Origin: Calcarisporiella thermophila CBS 279.70 | Taxonomy: Eukaryota > Fungi > Calcarisporiellomycota | Direction: 5' to 3' | Assembly (NCBI RefSeq): GCF_041956535.1 | Contig: NW_027192197.1 | Location: 1,157,673 to 1,221,672, forward strand | DNA length: 64,000 bases | In this document: one piece after another, positions 1,551-8,250 of the stretch | Layout of the letters: each line of letters opens with the position of its first letter | How positions within the stretch are numbered: position 1 is the first letter of the stretch | Position numbers and translations under genes: made by a program | The notes under the pieces: model-generated | What the model was told of the DNA's origin: nothing | What the model saw: only the letters and a program-made list of their open reading frames with translations | The model's database searches: none

Positions 1551-4201
1551 TCAACTCCTTGATTTCAGCATTTTTGCATACCGTAGACCGCACGCGTTAC
1601 AAAGTGTTTTTGGACCTCCAGGTCCTCGTCTCCATTCGGGCGAGTCCGTTCGATGGCATTGTGAGCACATCTTTTGAGGACAATCTGGCCGTTTTCGCTT
1701 GTGTGTTCGTGAATATTCAATTGCTCTGATTTGTTCACGCAGTCGGCGATTCAGTTGAATAAGCTGGTGGAGTTCGTATTGCCAATTCGACGCACGTGTT
1801 ACTTCAAGTTCTGCAAAAGCGTTACTATTGGGGTCGTGGGTTAATGAAGGCGGCTGTAAAGTCAAATTCGAAGCAAGTGGTGGCGATGCGGAGCTATTGT
1901 CATCATCGCTTTTTTGTGAGTCGGTATCGCTATGGGTTGGTGTCGATGTGTCTGCGGAGAATGATGCCGGCAGAGCAGCATTCTGGGCTGTGGTGGGCAT
2001 GTATGAGGGGGAATAGTAAATGGCCGATGGACGAAAAGATGCAAATCTAGCCAATATGAACGAGGTCTCTCCATTGGGTTGCCACTGACACCCCGGGAAA
2101 AAAGTGGCTTCAATGCTTAGTTGTTGACCATTTTTCTTTCGAAAAGGGAGGAACAAGGATGTCTCTTGGCCAACCGAGGCTTTCTTCAGTGCAAGTGTGA
2201 GCCTTGTCATATACTCAGGCAAGACTAACTGGTATATTGACATGGAGACAAGCTCAGCCGGCTCGAATTCCAACACACGCATGCTTTCGGGCGTGGCATG
2301 CAGCCAAAGGCCTTCGAGTGACAACTTGGACCAAAATGTCTCTTTATATACCTCTTTTCCACCACCAGCTTGCGCGAACTCACTCGTTGCCCTTGCTACA
2401 TCACTTTCATTCATGCCTCTTGGATCACCGTTGTTGTCCTCCATGTAACACCCTGTTGAATCGAAATGTCGCCATGCTAGCTCGTACACCGGACGTAGCC
2501 GCCCAACAAGCAAAAAATATTTGCGTCCCTTTGAATGCTCCATGAATATGCTGCCGTGGCAATCCATCCAAGCATACCCTGACCGTTTTCGCTTTGCCCT
2601 AAAGATACATGATATTCTTCTCTCCCCATGGCCCGACTTTTTCGCGGCTTCTCTCAATTCTCTCATCACCGGGACGAAATCATTGGGATGGCAAACGAGC
2701 GAAATACTCTGGCCGACAAGCTCCTCTGGGTGGTATTCAAGCATATCATGAGCACTTGCCGAACAGTGAACAAATATTCCCTTGAGGGAGAGTACATAGA
2801 TGAAGTCGGGTGATGCATCGAAGAGCAATTTATACCAGCTCTCTTTCGCGTCATCGAGATTTGTAGCGCGTAAATTACCAGCTAATTGCATTGCATTGCC
2901 CATGTCCGGCAATGGAGTATGTCTGGGCGGGTAGCTGGGGTTGTCGGAGAAATATCCCCCTGACATGTCCATCAGGGGTGCTAAGGGTGAATAGAAGATT
3001 AAGGGAGGGCGAAACTTACTTAGGTGTAAAAATGGTACGAACGATTTGACATTAGAGGCGTGACACTCTCCAGGCGGTAATTCATCGCGTGTGTTCCGTC
3101 TCTCATTCTTTCTCTAATCGCGCTGGGCTGTTTCGCCAAATCCTTGTGGTAGAAATTAAGAATTGGGAATTGCCCATGTTACAATAGCCAGATAATGAGA
3201 TGCTTACGATTTGAAGCCCGACAAAGTACTCTATTCCATCTACCTCCCCGCTCACTGGGATGATCGACACCAAGTTGACAAAAGGTTCACCATTTTTCCG
3301 ATAATTTATCAGTGGAGTCTGACATTCTTTTCCCTGCAACATATGGGTCTTCATGAGGTATACTGCGTCATTATTGGTGTAATGGCGTCGTGACCCAAGC
3401 GTTACCAGGCCATCTGGAGCCTGGAGGAATCGGCAATTACGACCGACTATCTCGCTATATTGGTATCCAGTCAGACGCTCGAAACACGGGCTCGCGTATA
3501 CAATGGGGTAGTCATATTTGCGCGCGTCAACGACGAGAAAAGAACAGGAGAAATCGATGGGTCCGATATTGATTTGCGGGTTTTGCCTGAGAGGGGAGAG
3601 ATAGAGGAAATGAGTTGCGGGAGGGCGTTTTAAGTGTGGCCCTATAAATCCCATTAACTCACCTATTGATTAGACGATGGAGTAGTTCAAGAACATCAAA
3701 TCCTGAGCTGCTATACATGCCGGTGTGTTGCGAGGGTGCTATAGCACCTAAATATGCCATAAGAGAGATGAGGCAACGTAGAATGTTTCTGTTTGATTGC
3801 ATCTCATTTCTCACCGGTTAATGTTTTTGCCTCCGACGGCCGCTTAATGACCGTGAATCCGTTTTCTTTTCCATCCCCAAAGGGCATGTGTCTTGCAAGC
3901 TCCTCGGAAAGTGGCACGTCCCAATCCGGGACATCGGGGGTGTAGAAAGCACTAGCATCGCCGATGGACATGGGCAATTGCAAATTGCTATTAAGTAAAA
4001 AGGGTTATGCGGGGAGCAAGGGATGCGGGTGGAGGGTATACGTTACAGAGGATCGAAGGGAGGATGATTGGGGGTGGGGGGCAGGAGAAGCCTTGCAAGG
4101 GGGGGCGTGTGATGAACTAACGCGCCGTCTGAGGATTTGTCCGTTTGCTCCAGTGATTTGGTCTTTCGATCATAATCTGGGTCTGGAATGCCGAATTCCA
4201 T
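1551..4201 (-). CDS. wc-1: White collar-1-type blue-light photoreceptor (LOV-PAS-PAS-GATA zinc finger), multi-exon
   Basis: [10 protein letters not shown]'alpha motif; LOV core [12 protein letters not shown]...GRNCRFLQ with the photoactive Cys; two PAS domains; C-terminal CSQC-x18-CNAC GATA finger. Start ATG at 4201 inferred from splice signals. Confidence 0.93.
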
Positions 4202-5606
4202 GTAAAAGGTTGGGAGGGGGCGCCAGTATCAAGGGAGGAGATTAAGGCGGCGATTGTGTGCGAAATAACTTGTAATATGTAGGAGGGGTGGAAAAATAGA
4301 AAAGGCGGTTTTCTTTAATAGGAACTTTTTTAGAAAGGCATAGAATTTTGCCTATGTCAAGGATGCGTCCCATATCAAATCGGGCCCTTTGCGCTCCGAG
4401 CATTTGCTCTCAATACCTAATCTGATAGATCTCTGTATTACCCTATAATTTCGGTAAAACTCTCTAGTGATTAATTTGGGCGAATTCTCCCACGTGCCGA
4501 AATAGGAGAATCAGAATCCGGATAAACATTCATGAGCGGGGATATGCACTCGGAGCCGATCAGTCCAAAATCACAGGAATCATTTCAAGTTTCTGCTTAC
4601 CATGCCTCCTCCCTTCGAAAGCTTCCATTCGGCATGTAGGATGCCCTCAATAGGATCCCGCCGCAAGCCGGTTTTTTCGCCTCGCCTCCTCTATGAGCCC
4701 ATGCCGAGCTATTCAACAAGGCAAAAGGCCGCCGTGTTTTTCATCTCAAGCCGCAAGGCTGGTCTTGCCGCGAGCCGCCGATGCCGCATTGGGGCAGAAG
4801 GCTGAATGCCTTTTCGGGAAATTCTTCAGAAAACACGAGTGTGGCGCTGGACCGTCTGAAATAACCCAAGCTCTGGAAGAGATCTTTACTCATGACTAAG
4901 AAGGTTTAGAAATTCCAGAGTCGGCTCGACGGTTTCACAAAGCTGCGGCTGGCCACGAACCTTCATGGCCTTGGAGGGCCTCGCAGGCGTACGGGCTCTG
5001 TTAGAAGCCTAAAATTTGCTTGCGTTAATGAACACTCACATTTAAATTAAACCATCGTAATTCCAGGTGGGATGCGTGCAATATATCCTCTTATAGTAGG
5101 TATGCCAATTGCGAACGTAATCCTAAGCTCGCACTCTATCCGAGTGTATTGACATCAGACGGATCGTGCGCAATTGGGATAGGAATCTGCCAGCTTCGAG
5201 AATATTCCCATTCAGTGGAATTTAGTTGAATCCTCTTAGCTGCTATTTGGAAAATTGAAGCCATCTTCCAATAGACTCGGAGCCGATTTCACGCGACGGC
5301 CACACTCCCAGTAGAATACGATGGACTGGGGATATAATAGTACATGATTTCGTCATGGCATCGATCTATAGATGTCCTTCGAAATCCTTCATCGACCTGC
5401 GAATGTGAAGATTCCTGTATTTGTTTGTGCAATTAGTTTCACAGAGTATGCCTACGGCCATGCAACCATGATCCCATTCCTCTCAACCTCGATCCTTATA
5501 TTGGAAACAGACAATATATATTTCAAAACTAAGGTTATAACCCAGCACAATAAGAGCATCCATAAGGTTGGAATCATTTCTATTCCAGACTCTATCATCG
5601 CTGTGG

Positions 5607-8250
5607 CTAATAGTTCTCTTTTGCCTCTTTCGGGAGAAGCTCACCCTTCTTCTTGATGACTCCCATATGCAAAATGCGATCTCCCGCCATTGCCACCGGA
5701 TTTGAGCTACGGCCAATAGCCTGGAGGGTAGATAAGCGATTAGGGACGCAATGACACTGTAATTGCCTAACTTAAGCTACTCACTACACCGGTGCACGGA
5801 GCAAAGTATTCATCGACCACATTGCCGAATATGTTCTTAATACGTGCAATTAAGTCGCCCTTGCGCACAAGGGTATTGGTATTTGGATATACTTCTAGGA
5901 CTCCTCCCGTACGAGTATATATCTAAAGAACACTCGTTAGTTTCATTGCATCCAATCCGATAAATCATACGAAAATTTCTGACCCAAAAGCCTTTTGAAC
6001 ACAGTACAGTGGTCGGAGGGAGGGGGATCGATGGATACTCCGAGAGCGGATCCATCGTAAACATTCCGAAGTGGTTGAGTATCCGCATCACACCCATATA
6101 TGACCACTGCACGTATTGGTTTTGGAAGAGCTGCGGGTTTCCAATCTCAACGGTAATGGCCTTAATGCCCCGGGCCATACATGCTGATCGCAGCGTTCCT
6201 ATGGAAAGCGTTAGAACAATCAGACAAGGATCAGCCCCTCTCTCCTCCCTCTCAAGCAGTCAAGCGGACAAATACCATCCTGTCCCGAGTTATGCAATAT
6301 GATCTGCGGCTGTTGTAAGTTTGCCATCGCTGCTGTCTCTGAATCGTTCATATCACTCCTCACATAATAGCTGTTCACTCTCCCAAAACTCGCCGTATGC
6401 AAATCAATCAGGTAATTGAACTGGCTGATGACCTTGTTCATCAGACAGTGAGCATATACTTGTGAAGCCATCCCATCTTCGCATCCCGGAAATGATCGAT
6501 TCAAGTCTTTTCCATCGGCAAACTCTCGCTGGTATTTAAGATATCCGGACGTGTTGACACAAGGAACGGCCACAACTGTGCCCTTAAGTTTGTGCACGTC
6601 AATATCCGTCACCACGCTAAAAGGGTGCTCATGGGAATCAATGGAAGTCATAAACAGCGTGATCAACTCTATATGCTTACCGATGAATACACGGAACACC
6701 GTTTAATTCGTTGCCATGAACGGCAGCCGTAATCCCAATGACCGGCCCTTCTTCCTTGCCTCGCGCAACAATGACAGGGAGACGCATCCACTCGCTCAAC
6801 CCTTGTTTCACCATCTTTATCCATGCGGTACTTATTTGCTCTTCCGGAAAATCTTCGATGACCAATCTATCTCTCACCACTGGTGGAGGCACATCGCTCT
6901 CATTTTGGAATCGCGAACTAAATTCAGGAGGCTCATAACGCACGACGGAATCCCACTGTTTATAAGGGAGTCGCCCGTCTTTTTTGATGCTTGGCTCAAC
7001 TATAGGACTAACGAGGGGGGGTGGCAGCTGGGTCTGATCAAGCACTGGCGAGGTTACATTACGCTGCATTTTATCGATCATTTCCTGGGGAAGATTCCAC
7101 AACGGCTGATCATCAAAAATTATAAGCGAGCCTTTTCGTCGAGGGGGTGGGCGCCGGATAGTTTGCACCGGGGAGGTAGAGCCATCGCTTCCTGCGGTAA
7201 GCTTGGAGTCTGTGGATACTACCTGTATGATCACCACGGTCGCATCTTTATAAATCCGCAACATACTCCCTGTTAGCAAAGAGAAACGTCTTCATAACCA
7301 CAAATATTGTGCCCAGCTTTGTACCTTTATCTTGGTATTTAACGTTTCCTTTCTCATCGGCAGGAAGAATGACCATGCTGGTTGGAGAGCTATCTTCCTC
7401 TCTTTCAATAACCATGGTTTGGCCTGGTCCCACTAAACGGATAGTCTCGTTCTCCTCGAGAGACACTCTCACCTTTCCTTCCACGGAATACACCAGCGTG
7501 AATCGTCCAAGAAGTAACTTTTTACTCCCGTTGCCATTTTCGACCGCGCTGCTCTCTCCGGCTTTCTCAACCAGGAATTTCACCTTACCCTTAGAGCGAT
7601 CCATAACGAAATTGAGTGTGTTAATGGGAGGGTTGATTACGCGACAAGTTGTAGGCCTAGTTTTTAATTTTTTTTAAAAAAAAACGTAAATTCCCACAGA
7701 ATTCACTGAACTACTCCGCTCATATCGAAAGCTTGAATAAATACCATTCACCACCATATGTGTAAGGAAACAGCGCTTTAACAATATGGTTCGACTCTTC
7801 TCCACGGTGATTGAGGGCCAGAGAAGGTTTGGTATTTGCAGGGGTATCGCCTGGAAGGGCAATAATGGTGCTATATAATAAGTAAAAGCGCGCATTGGAT
7901 TAATGGCTAACCAAATCAATGATTATAAAAGATATAAAGGAATAGGAAATTATATTGATTTTAACACCATAACCACAGGTTCTGTTTCTGCATAAAAGGA
8001 ATAAATGACGAAGCAAATCAGCATTCTCAATTTACCAGTCGTGTCTAGGGAATAGAGAAAAGCTACAATTGGCATGGATGGTGGTTGCGCTGAATCTCCA
8101 GAAGAACTCATCGTCATGAAAATTTTTTTCTGGTGGATGAATTGCAATCTCATAAGTGGTGCCAAGTCCATTTCGCCAAGCCATCTCCTTATAATCCTTT
8201 GCAGGATCGAGGAGCATAGTGCGAATAACACCCTCGTTGCTATCTTCCAT
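5607..8250 (-). CDS. HutD/Ves-like cupin fused to succinylglutamate desuccinylase/aspartoacylase (M14) deacylase, multi-exon
   Basis: N-terminal MAWRNGLGTTYEIA...FFWRFS...FSLFP and YGGEWPTTCRV..P..TLNFVMDR match the HutD pattern. C-terminal AAVHGNELNG (HxxE), DLNRSFPG, IDLHT, AITVEIG and NPVAMAGDRILHMG match M14. The HutD exons and the HutD-to-M14 junction join in frame through GT-AG introns. Confidence 0.85.

What the first reader, a model, noticed from the sequence alone, without database searches (positions are those of the whole stretch)
5607..8250. Spliced HutD-cupin::AstE/AspA deacylase fusion: possible fungal sensor-enzyme for N-acyl amino acid or histidine catabolism
Seen: the HutD/Ves exons (WRNGLGTTYEIA, FWRFS, FSLFP, YGGEWPTTCRV, LNFVMDR) splice in frame into an M14 deacylase with the zinc and catalytic motifs HGNE, NRSFPG, DLHT and TVEIG. 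The junction intron GTACAA...GCTAAC...AG at about 7246-7324 keeps the frame with either candidate acceptor. The Pro-rich linker carries RRKGS, a PKA-like site. Known: HutD is a mainly bacterial bicupin of histidine-utilisation (hut) operons, reported to bind urocanate and N-formylglutamate, and AstE/AspA enzymes hydrolyse N-acyl amino acids. Inference: two bacterial-type modules were fused and gained introns, giving a ligand-gated or channelling deacylase, for example an N-formylglutamate deformylase replacing HutG. I know of no characterised protein with this architecture.
Basis: partly seen in the sequence, partly recalled or inferred. Interest (0 to 1): 0.8.

Follow-up and report, generated by a model that had tools for sequence, protein, structure and literature searches.

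The report
Fungal HutD-cupin fused to zinc deacylase
This is one real eight-exon fungal gene that joins a HutD-type ligand-binding barrel to a zinc amide-cleaving enzyme; the protein is already in public databases and is conserved across early-diverging fungi and an amoeba, its function is untested, and it is probably not part of histidine breakdown.

Summary
Window 8250..5607 (minus strand) is one 8-exon gene. Its spliced product equals the public 681-aa protein VTP21DRAFT_10774 of Calcarisporiella thermophila. It has a HutD bicupin (Pfam 7e-22; TM 0.9 to PA5104/HutD), a roughly 100-residue disordered linker and an AstE/AspA zinc deacylase with all its motifs intact.

The fusion is real. Exon 4 alone encodes the last HutD strand, the linker and the HGNE zinc motif. 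More than 80 orthologues in chytrids, Blastocladiomycota, Mucoromycota and Acanthamoeba share the architecture, so it is widespread and catalogued. I found no characterisation of it.

The histidine idea is not supported. The genome has no urocanase and no histidine ammonia-lyase.

- The catalytic domain is 46-52% identical to bacterial deacylases. These sit in operons with a RimK-type glutamate ligase and an unnamed ~477-aa protein, which folds like glutathione-synthetase-type ATP-grasp ligases.
- The fungus keeps that second ligase on another contig, and also a second deacylase copy fused to SPX.
- The linker motif R-x-G-S-[IL]-[IV]-V-Y-D-D-Q-P is conserved in 55 of 57 orthologues.

Best reading: a sensor-gated amidohydrolase for a glutamyl-type conjugate. 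The substrate and the role of HutD are inferred, not shown. The scan had already noted the SPX-fused copy elsewhere in this genome (s1-588244).

The parts
5607..8250 (-). Whole coding region of the HutD::AstE/AspA gene (8 exons, 681 aa plus stop)
   Evidence: Gene model. The translation is identical to public protein P0181.
8036..8250 (-). Exon 1: start codon and the N-terminal HutD signature (WRNGLGTTYEI at 8178-8146, FWRFS, FSLFP)
   Evidence: Pfam HutD 7.7e-14, profile positions 1-51.
7745..7870 (-). Exon 2: middle of the first cupin barrel
   Evidence: In-frame splice. Covered by tblastn of orthologues.
7325..7656 (-). Exon 3: second cupin barrel of HutD
   Evidence: Weak HutD hit at profile positions 89-167. 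High pLDDT strands in the AF2 model.
7246..7324 (-). Junction intron (79 nt; GTACAA donor, GCTAAC branch site, AAAG acceptor). An alternative in-frame AG lies at 7270.
   Evidence: Spizellomyces has an intron at the same spot, just before 'DATV'.
6681..7245 (-). Exon 4: last HutD beta-strand (DATVVIIQV, 7243-7220), the disordered linker, and the start of the deacylase domain including HGNE (6718-6707)
   Evidence: A single open exon spans both domains. AF2 places strand 226-235 inside the bicupin.
7103..7138 (-). Conserved linker motif R-K-G-S-L-I-I-F-D-D-Q-P (residues 261-272), a basophilic-kinase-type site (R at -3) followed by a hydrophobic and acidic stretch
   Evidence: R261 and S264 are each present in 55 of 57 orthologues; D269, D270, Q271 and P272 in 45-51 of 57.
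6276..6616 (-). Exon 5: catalytic core with DLNRSFPG (6507-6484) and DLHT (6405-6394)
   Evidence: Pfam AstE_AspA_cat 1.1e-13. These columns are invariant in A1.
5984..6198 (-). Exon 6: TVEIG catalytic glutamate motif (6154-6140) and the following helix
   Evidence: T542-G546 are invariant in 57 orthologues.
5785..5922 (-). Exon 7: C-terminal beta domain of the deacylase
   Evidence: Aligned with 3na6 and DoeB up to residue 666 and with bacterial homologues.
5607..5720 (-). Exon 8: end of the deacylase and the nearly invariant C-terminal tail KEAKENY (5630-5610), then the stop
   Evidence: A677-Y681 are at least 90% conserved. The tail has low pLDDT.

Best explanation
Shown: window 8250..5607 (minus strand) is one 8-exon gene of Calcarisporiella thermophila, public protein VTP21DRAFT_10774, 681 aa. 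It encodes an N-terminal HutD/Ves bicupin (residues ~9-236). A ~100-residue disordered linker follows, carrying a conserved R-x-G-S-[IL]-[IV]-V-Y-D-D-Q-P motif. The C-terminal part is a zinc amidohydrolase of the AstE/AspA (M14) family with intact metal ligands (HGNE, DLHT), substrate arginine (DLNR) and catalytic glutamate (TVEIG). It belongs to an orthologous family conserved in Chytridiomycota, Blastocladiomycota, Mucoromycota and Acanthamoeba. Its catalytic domain is the eukaryotic counterpart of a bacterial ~330-aa deacylase. That bacterial enzyme is encoded next to two ATP-grasp-type carboxylate-amine ligases: a RimK-family alpha-L-glutamate ligase and an unnamed ~477-aa glutathione-synthetase-like protein. 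The fungus keeps the second ligase on contig C26 and a second deacylase copy fused to an SPX domain on C21. I found no RimK ligase in it. Inferred: the enzyme cleaves an amide bond that frees an amino acid, most likely glutamate, from a small N-acyl-amino-acid or peptide-like conjugate made by the retained ligase. The HutD barrel acts as a small-molecule-binding regulatory or substrate-recognition module, as SPX would in the paralogue. The conserved linker serine adds kinase control. It is not a step of histidine catabolism in this organism.
For: Gene and domains.
Fold: AF2 model with pTM 0.71. The HutD part has TM 0.88-0.91 (rmsd ~2 A) to 1yll/5v00/5fcc. The deacylase part matches 3cdx, 6twm (DoeB), 2qj8, 3na6 and CphZ.
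Fusion is real: exon 4 encodes the last bicupin strand, the linker and HGNE. The architecture recurs in more than 80 proteins, including Acanthamoeba P0240. Spizellomyces has the same intron position.
Active site: H401, E404, R453, H486 and E544 are invariant or at least 90% conserved.
Bacterial counterpart: 46-52% identity at E 1e-98 to 1e-106 over ~320 aa, against only 1e-12 to 1e-17 to DoeB and 3cdx. A RimK-type gene lies in 58 and the ~477-aa gene in 60 of 80 bacterial loci, mostly adjacent and on the same strand.
The ~477-aa protein: AF2 pLDDT 85.7, pTM 0.90. Foldseek matches glutathione synthetase, glutathionylspermidine synthetase and YgiC-type ATP-grasp ligases at E 1e-9 to 1e-10.
Fungal copy of that ligase: G000:C26:171263-173067, 47-60% identity over query residues 21-488. 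An ESM Atlas cluster of 85 mostly Mucoromycota proteins has TM 0.95 to it.
SPX-fused relatives.
Linker motif conservation.
The HutD-fused deacylase domains form one clade (SH-aLRT 99) with very short branches.
Against: No enzymatic or ligand-binding data exist for any member. The substrate class rests on bacterial gene neighbourhood and family chemistry only. The RimK partner is not found in this fungus, so the bacterial pathway is not conserved whole. HutD never occurs next to the bacterial deacylase (0 of 80 loci). In 10 HutD-bearing genomes of one bacterial phylum, HutD and AstE/AspA genes lie on different contigs. So nothing outside the fusion itself links HutD to this enzyme. Foldseek TM-scores for the ~477-aa protein are modest (0.4-0.5).
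Confidence: 0.55

Rival explanations
1. One reading: the enzyme is an N-formylglutamate (or N-succinylglutamate) deacylase of histidine or arginine catabolism, with HutD sensing urocanate or formylglutamate and replacing HutG.
For: In Pseudomonas, hutD is co-transcribed with hut genes and is implicated in preventing formylglutamate build-up (PMC8034625). In E. coli K-12 the HutD-family gene ves lies two genes downstream of astE on the same strand. Characterised AstE/AspA enzymes hydrolyse N-acyl-Glu or N-acyl-Asp.
Against: No urocanase and no histidine or aromatic ammonia-lyase in the 28-Mb genome. The catalytic domain fails the NCBIfam cut-offs for AstE (17.6 vs 305.65 bits), aspartoacylase (26 vs 180) and DoeB (62 vs 402.7). 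Its closest bacterial relatives sit with ATP-grasp ligases, never with HutD. HutD and AstE/AspA genes are not linked in 10 sampled HutD-bearing bacterial genomes.
Confidence: 0.06
2. It acts on a protein or peptide tail rather than a small metabolite. It would be a deglutamylase-type carboxypeptidase that trims C-terminal glutamates or another ligase-added tag, as the antagonist of an ATP-grasp tagging enzyme.
For: Bacterial orthologues pair with RimK-family alpha-L-glutamate ligases. The catalytic domain evolves unusually slowly, at 76-77% identity between Calcarisporiella and chytrids. The C-terminal tail is nearly invariant and poorly modelled. M14 enzymes in general are carboxypeptidases.
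Against: RimK is not found in this fungus. All characterised AstE/AspA-family members matched here (DoeB, CphZ) use small substrates. No candidate protein substrate is known.
Confidence: 0.15
3. The HutD barrel is not a sensor. It is a second catalytic or purely structural (oligomerisation) domain, making the protein bifunctional or simply scaffolded.
For: Structural neighbours of the barrel include cupin enzymes such as BacB, AerE and quercetinase. The function of bacterial HutD is unknown (PMC8034625).
Against: The best matches by far are HutD proteins themselves (TM ~0.9), and no enzymatic activity of HutD is reported in what I could read. A sister family carries SPX, a known regulatory sensor domain, at the same N-terminal position. 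That favours a regulatory role for whatever sits there.
Confidence: 0.15
4. Gene-model artefact: two adjacent genes (a stand-alone HutD ending at the stop at 7251-7249, and a deacylase starting inside exon 4) wrongly joined.
For: Without splicing of intron 3, the HutD frame runs to a stop codon at 7251-7249, so a HutD-only product is conceivable if the intron is retained. No RNA data were available.
Against: The last strand of the bicupin lies in exon 4 together with the linker and HGNE. There is no intergenic space. The same architecture occurs in more than 80 species across two eukaryotic supergroup lineages. Spizellomyces has an intron at the same position. The linker itself carries a motif conserved in 55 of 57 orthologues.
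Confidence: 0.03

Closest known systems
DoeB/EutE, N-acetyl-L-2,4-diaminobutyrate deacetylase (PDB 6twl/6twm), and the structural-genomics deacylases 3cdx, 3na6 and 2qj8
   Same: Same AstE/AspA zinc-deacylase fold and motifs. These are the best solved sequence and structure matches to residues ~378-666.
   Different: Only E 1e-12 to 1e-17. The NCBIfam DoeB score is 62 bits against a cut-off of 402.7. They have no N-terminal HutD domain and no linker. DoeB belongs to ectoine-utilisation operons.
Bacterial ~330-aa deacylases encoded in [~477-aa ATP-grasp-like protein]-[RimK-type ligase]-[deacylase] clusters (Saprospiraceae, Myxococcota, Planctomycetota, Cyanobacteria)
   Same: 46-52% identity over the whole catalytic and C-terminal domain, with the same motifs. 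The fungus also keeps a homologue of the ~477-aa partner.
   Different: The bacterial proteins are single-domain and operon-encoded, and none of 80 loci has HutD nearby. The fungal gene is intron-bearing and fused to HutD, and the RimK partner was not found. I found no characterisation of the bacterial system either.
HutD of Pseudomonas (PDB 5fcc/5v00, PA5104 1yll) and Ves of E. coli
   Same: Same bicupin fold (TM 0.88-0.91) and family signature, W-[KR]-N-G-x-G-x-T-x-E-I and W-R-x-S.
   Different: The bacterial proteins are stand-alone at ~190 aa, and identity is about 18%. The Ves equivalog score is 32.9 bits against a cut-off of 292. This genome has no hut pathway. In this species the near-invariant G-Y of the FPGYD motif is R-H.
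SPX::AstE/AspA proteins of Mortierella, Ramicandelaber and this same genome (contig C21)
   Same: Paralogous catalytic domain (44-50% identity) with an N-terminal accessory domain and linker in the same arrangement.
   Different: The N-terminal domain is SPX (an inositol-pyrophosphate and phosphate sensor), not HutD. The C-terminal tail ends in DDGH(M) instead of KEAKENY.
Aspartoacylase (ASPA) and succinylglutamate desuccinylase (AstE)
   Same: Same Pfam catalytic family and zinc/glutamate mechanism motifs.
   Different: Far below the equivalog cut-offs (26 vs 180 bits; 17.6 vs 305.65 bits). It is not an orthologue of either.

Membership tests
HutD family (Pfam PF05962) | Sequence match above the Pfam gathering score | tested here: met
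   78.8 bits against a cut-off of 25, residues 17-201. Exon 1 alone gives 52.7 bits.
HutD family (Pfam PF05962) | Bicupin fold like the solved HutD proteins | tested here: met
   AF2 model against 1yll, 5v00 and 5fcc: target-normalised TM 0.88-0.91, rmsd 1.9-2.7 A.
HutD family (Pfam PF05962) | Association with histidine-utilisation genes (hutH, hutU) | tested here: not met
   No PF01175 or PF00221 match in the 28-Mb genome.
Ves (E. coli equivalog NF008488) | Score above the NCBIfam equivalog cut-off | tested here: not met
   32.9 bits against a cut-off of 292.
AstE/AspA zinc deacylases (Pfam PF24827, MEROPS M14 type) | Sequence match above the gathering score | tested here: met
   97.6 bits against a cut-off of 25, residues 391-569.
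AstE/AspA zinc deacylases (Pfam PF24827, MEROPS M14 type) | Zinc ligands H-x-x-E and a second His, substrate Arg, catalytic Glu | tested here: met
   HGNE 401-404, DLNR 450-453, DLHT 484-487 and TVEIG 542-546 are all invariant or at least 90% conserved in 57 orthologues. The roles of the residues come from established knowledge of aspartoacylase, not from an assay.
AstE/AspA zinc deacylases (Pfam PF24827, MEROPS M14 type) | Zinc-dependent amidohydrolase activity | not testable with these tools
   Needs an enzyme assay.
Succinylglutamate desuccinylase AstE (TIGR03242) | Equivalog cut-off | tested here: not met
   17.6 bits against 305.65.
Aspartoacylase (NF002601) | Equivalog cut-off | tested here: not met
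   26.1 bits against 180.
DoeB/EutE (TIGR02994) | Equivalog cut-off | tested here: not met
   62.1 bits against 402.7.
Eukaryotic HutD::AstE/AspA fusion family (uncharacterised; e.g. BATDEDRAFT_28088, Spizellomyces P0169, Acanthamoeba P0240) | Both domains in one polypeptide in this order, a conserved linker motif, and an orthologous catalytic domain | tested here: met
   Identical to family member P0181. 53-64% identity to all but two of the 56 other fused members, which are at 43% and 49%. One clade in the tree, SH-aLRT 99. Motif present.

The most novel reading that the evidence does not exclude
The HutD-fused and SPX-fused deacylases, together with the retained glutathione-synthetase-like ATP-grasp ligase, form an unrecognised make-and-break cycle for an amide-linked (probably glutamyl) metabolite or tag in early-diverging fungi and Amoebozoa. 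The cycle would descend from a bacterial three-gene operon. Breakdown would be gated by phosphate/inositol-pyrophosphate status (SPX), by an unknown small ligand (HutD) and by a conserved linker phosphosite. If so, the fusion would also give the first functional handle on what HutD/Ves proteins bind.
Probability: 0.2. Interest if true: 0.75.

Novelty: new variant of a known kind. Interest (0 to 1): 0.45.

Why it matters
The function of HutD/Ves is still described as unknown in the recent paper read here (PMC8034625, 2021). A conserved fusion to an intact deacylase is a Rosetta-stone hint that can be tested directly with recombinant protein. The same catalytic domain also carries SPX in a sister family. 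Its bacterial counterparts sit beside two ATP-grasp ligases, one of which the fungus retains. Together these points suggest a regulated synthesis-and-hydrolysis pair for an unidentified amide compound in chytrids, Mucoromycota and amoebae. That pair has no characterised member, and no Dikarya protein appeared among the 87 hits. The gene itself is not a discovery: it and its orthologues are already in public databases, and the Batrachochytrium orthologue was listed in 2016 as a bacterial-derived gene of unknown function (PMC5005798).

Tried and rejected
2. Docking of the HutD domain on the deacylase domain: complex prediction did not fold the job. There is no verdict, and it is no evidence either way.
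3. My first acceptor choice (AG at 7270, giving 689 aa) was dropped. The AG sits 2 nt after the branch site, and the public model uses 7246.
4. The search for homologous proteins with the HutD domain alone (residues 1-240) scored nothing. This is a word-index blank and carries no meaning.
5. The same tool with the ~477-aa bacterial protein returned only near-identical Saprospiraceae 'hypothetical proteins'. Pfam, NCBIfam and PDB sequence searches on it were blank.
6. Test of a general bacterial HutD-AstE/AspA linkage was negative: 0 of 80 deacylase loci have HutD. In 10 HutD-bearing genomes of one phylum, HutD and AstE/AspA genes lie on different contigs. The E. coli astE-spy-ves arrangement may therefore be local.
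7. Literature: no paper links HutD with fungi or aspartoacylase, or SPX with a desuccinylase. The 2017 HutD structure paper and a 2009 review of ATP-grasp amidoligases that I recalled from memory could not be read; my look-ups were not held.
8. Joined spliced model: it was not handed to any search tool. Exons were searched one by one by reference. Whole-protein work used the public protein P0181 returned. Joining was done only inside local scripts, to check the frame and identity.
Full report
**Observation**

The minus strand of window 8250..5607 holds eight exons joined by seven GT..AG introns of 55-165 nt.
- Exon 1 matches Pfam HutD at 7.7e-14.
- Exon 3 matches HutD weakly, at the expected later profile positions.
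- The last 20 residues of exon 4 match the start of AstE_AspA_cat.
- Exon 5 matches AstE_AspA_cat at 1.1e-13.
- NCBIfam gives only sub-threshold Ves and DoeB hits.

The joined model was never handed to a search tool. One search returned a public protein, P0181 ('uncharacterized protein VTP21DRAFT_10774 [Calcarisporiella thermophila]', 681 aa). A local script showed that P0181 equals the spliced translation residue for residue when exon 4 starts at 7245.

My first model used the AG at 7270 and gave 689 aa. The AG at 7270 lies 2 nt after the GCTAAC branch site, so the annotated intron 7324-7246 is the likely one. Scanned whole, P0181 gives HutD 7.3e-22 (residues 17-201) and AstE_AspA_cat 9.1e-28 (residues 391-569).

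**Is the fusion real?**

Three independent lines support one gene.

First, in an AlphaFold2 model built on 57 orthologues (mean pLDDT 74, pTM 0.71), the bicupin spans residues 9-236. Its last strand (226-235, DATVVIIQV) is encoded in exon 4. That same exon also encodes the whole linker and the first ~70 residues of the deacylase, including HGNE.

Second, the architecture recurs in more than 80 public proteins. They come from Chytridiomycota (Batrachochytrium, Spizellomyces and others), Blastocladiomycota, Mucoromycota (Mucor, Rhizopus, Lichtheimia, Umbelopsis) and Acanthamoeba castellanii.

Third, Spizellomyces has an intron at the same place, just before 'DATV'. Its following exon again runs from the last HutD strand into the deacylase.

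The genome holds a single HutD match, this gene, and two AstE/AspA matches.

**Anatomy**

*HutD part.* Foldseek gives target-normalised TM 0.88-0.91 and rmsd about 2 A to PA5104 (1yll) and P. fluorescens HutD (5v00, 5fcc). The family signature is kept.

*Linker (residues 241-340).* It is predicted disordered and varies in length and sequence between species, with two conserved islands:
- R-x-G-S-[IL]-[IV]-V-Y-D-D-Q-P. R261 and S264 are each present in 55 of 57 sequences.
- A second block just before the deacylase.

Whether it is phosphorylated is untested.

*Deacylase part.* HGNE, DLNR, DLHT and TVEIG are invariant or nearly so. The domain is 76-77% identical between this fungus and chytrids. 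The protein ends in a nearly invariant KEAKENY tail of low model confidence.

**What the catalytic domain is related to**

Solved relatives (3cdx, 3na6, DoeB 6twl/6twm, 2qj8) match only at 1e-12 to 1e-17. The NCBIfam equivalog cut-offs for DoeB, aspartoacylase and AstE all fail by wide margins.

Much closer, at 46-52% identity and E 1e-98 to 1e-106 over about 320 residues, are ~330-aa bacterial proteins from Saprospiraceae, Myxococcota, Planctomycetota and Cyanobacteria. Three were looked up with their called genes. All three sit next to a RimK-type ATP-grasp ligase. Two of them also have a ~477-aa protein without any Pfam family beside them.

In 80 fetched bacterial loci, a RimK-type gene is present in 58 and the ~477-aa gene in 60. 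The usual order is 477-aa gene, RimK, deacylase, on one strand. HutD is present in none. The same query panel does detect bacterial HutD proteins elsewhere.

I modelled the ~477-aa protein (pLDDT 85.7, pTM 0.90). Its fold matches glutathione synthetase, glutathionylspermidine synthetase, YgiC/YjfC and a putative gamma-glutamylcysteine synthetase, at E 1e-9 to 1e-10 with modest TM of 0.4-0.5. The ESM Atlas also places it near GshA-like and circularly permuted ATP-grasp clusters. So the bacterial cluster encodes two carboxylate-amine ligases and one amidohydrolase.

**What the fungus keeps**

- A homologue of the ~477-aa ligase lies at G000:C26:171263-173067, in five exon pieces at 47-60% identity covering query residues 21-488.
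- An ESM Atlas cluster of 85 mostly Mucoromycota proteins has TM 0.95 to the bacterial model.
- A RimK-type ligase was not found with two Pfam families and one protein query.
- The second AstE/AspA gene of the genome (C21) aligns with SPX::AstE/AspA proteins of Mortierella and Ramicandelaber. It has an SPX match just upstream on the same strand. An earlier scan note reports the same thing (s1-588244).

In a quick maximum-likelihood tree, the HutD-fused domains form one clade (SH-aLRT 99). Acanthamoeba branches beside the fungi, and the branches are very short. The SPX-fused domains cluster elsewhere with weak support. Deep branches are unresolved, so one or two acquisitions cannot be told apart. 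A 2016 paper already listed the Batrachochytrium 'succinylglutamate desuccinylase' as a bacterial-derived gene of unknown function, quoting 48% identity and 1e-100 (PMC5005798). That agrees with my numbers.

**The histidine hypothesis**

The genome has no urocanase and no histidine or aromatic ammonia-lyase match, while the control genomes ring for both families. There is therefore no source of formiminoglutamate or formylglutamate by the known route.

One lead did not generalise. In E. coli K-12 the HutD-family gene ves lies two genes downstream of astE on the same strand. In 10 HutD-bearing genomes of another bacterial phylum, however, HutD and AstE/AspA genes lie on different contigs, and HutD stands alone at ~170-190 aa.

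**Most likely mechanism**

*Shown:* an intact AstE/AspA-type zinc active site; an intact HutD barrel; a conserved linker motif; a sister family with SPX at the same position; a bacterial ligase-ligase-hydrolase neighbourhood; and retention of one ligase in the fungus.

*Inferred:*
- The enzyme hydrolyses an amide bond and releases an amino acid with a free alpha-carboxylate. This is what every characterised relative matched here does. Glutamate is the likeliest product, given the RimK and glutathione-synthetase-like partners.
- The substrate would be a small conjugate made by the retained ligase.
- The N-terminal barrel (or SPX in the paralogue) regulates or recruits.
- The linker serine adds kinase control.

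I give this whole reading 0.55. The structural part is near certain; the substrate class and the role of HutD are perhaps 0.35-0.4 each.

**Novelty and verdict**

The gene and its family are already in public databases, with both Pfam domains attached and only generic names. I found no characterisation. It is a variant of a known enzyme kind, not a new kind.

The value added here is context: the hut role is unlikely, the fusion is ancient and conserved, a parallel SPX fusion exists, and a conserved ligase partner suggests a testable synthesis-and-hydrolysis pair. Interest 0.45.

**Not run**

- The joined exon model was not submitted to any search tool.

Noticed in passing
G000:C21:~113900-116000 (locus L002:648-2572, minus strand): Second AstE/AspA gene of this genome. 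It aligns along its length with SPX::AstE/AspA proteins of Mortierella and Ramicandelaber and has an SPX profile hit just upstream on the same strand. So the genome carries both a HutD-fused and an SPX-fused deacylase. Earlier scan note s1-588244 says the same.
   Followed up: partly
G000:C26:171263-173067 (locus L093:~2560-4600, plus strand): Intron-bearing homologue (47-60% identity) of an unnamed ~477-aa bacterial protein. In bacteria that protein is encoded next to the deacylase and a RimK ligase. Its predicted fold is glutathione-synthetase-like ATP-grasp. An ESM Atlas cluster of 85 mostly Mucoromycota proteins shares the fold (TM 0.95).
   Followed up: partly
L011-L090 (bacterial loci), e.g. 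L026:7497-10954: Conserved three-gene cluster in Saprospiraceae, Myxococcota, Planctomycetota and Cyanobacteria: a ~477-aa ATP-grasp-like protein, a RimK-family alpha-L-glutamate ligase and an AstE/AspA deacylase. None of the three carries a specific name in the databases searched, and its product is unknown.
   Followed up: partly
L005 (E. coli K-12 NC_000913.3:1824362-1831982): The HutD-family gene ves lies on the same strand two genes downstream of astE (order astCADBE, spy, ves). The linkage was not seen in 10 HutD-bearing genomes of another phylum.
   Followed up: partly
window 8046-8041 (residues 69-70): In this species the near-invariant G-Y of the HutD motif F-P-G-Y-D is R-H. Y is present in at least 90% of 57 orthologues. 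This may mean an altered ligand pocket.
   Followed up: no
window 5630-5610 (residues 675-681): The C-terminal tail KEAKENY is nearly invariant from chytrids to Mucoromycota. Acanthamoeba ends in HENY and the SPX paralogues end in DDGH(M). The tail is modelled with low confidence. For a carboxypeptidase-type fold, a conserved own C-terminus is unexplained.
   Followed up: no
P0112 and P0150 (bacterial homologues in alignment A2): Some bacterial members have degenerate zinc and catalytic motifs, for example Q-G-N-A for H-G-N-E, D-L-Q-T for D-L-H-T and T-V-I-A-G for T-V-E-I-G. They may be inactive paralogues.
   Followed up: no
window 7251-7249: If intron 3 is retained, the HutD frame ends at a stop here. 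That would give a ~250-aa HutD-only product lacking the last barrel strand. Whether such an isoform exists is unknown.
   Followed up: no
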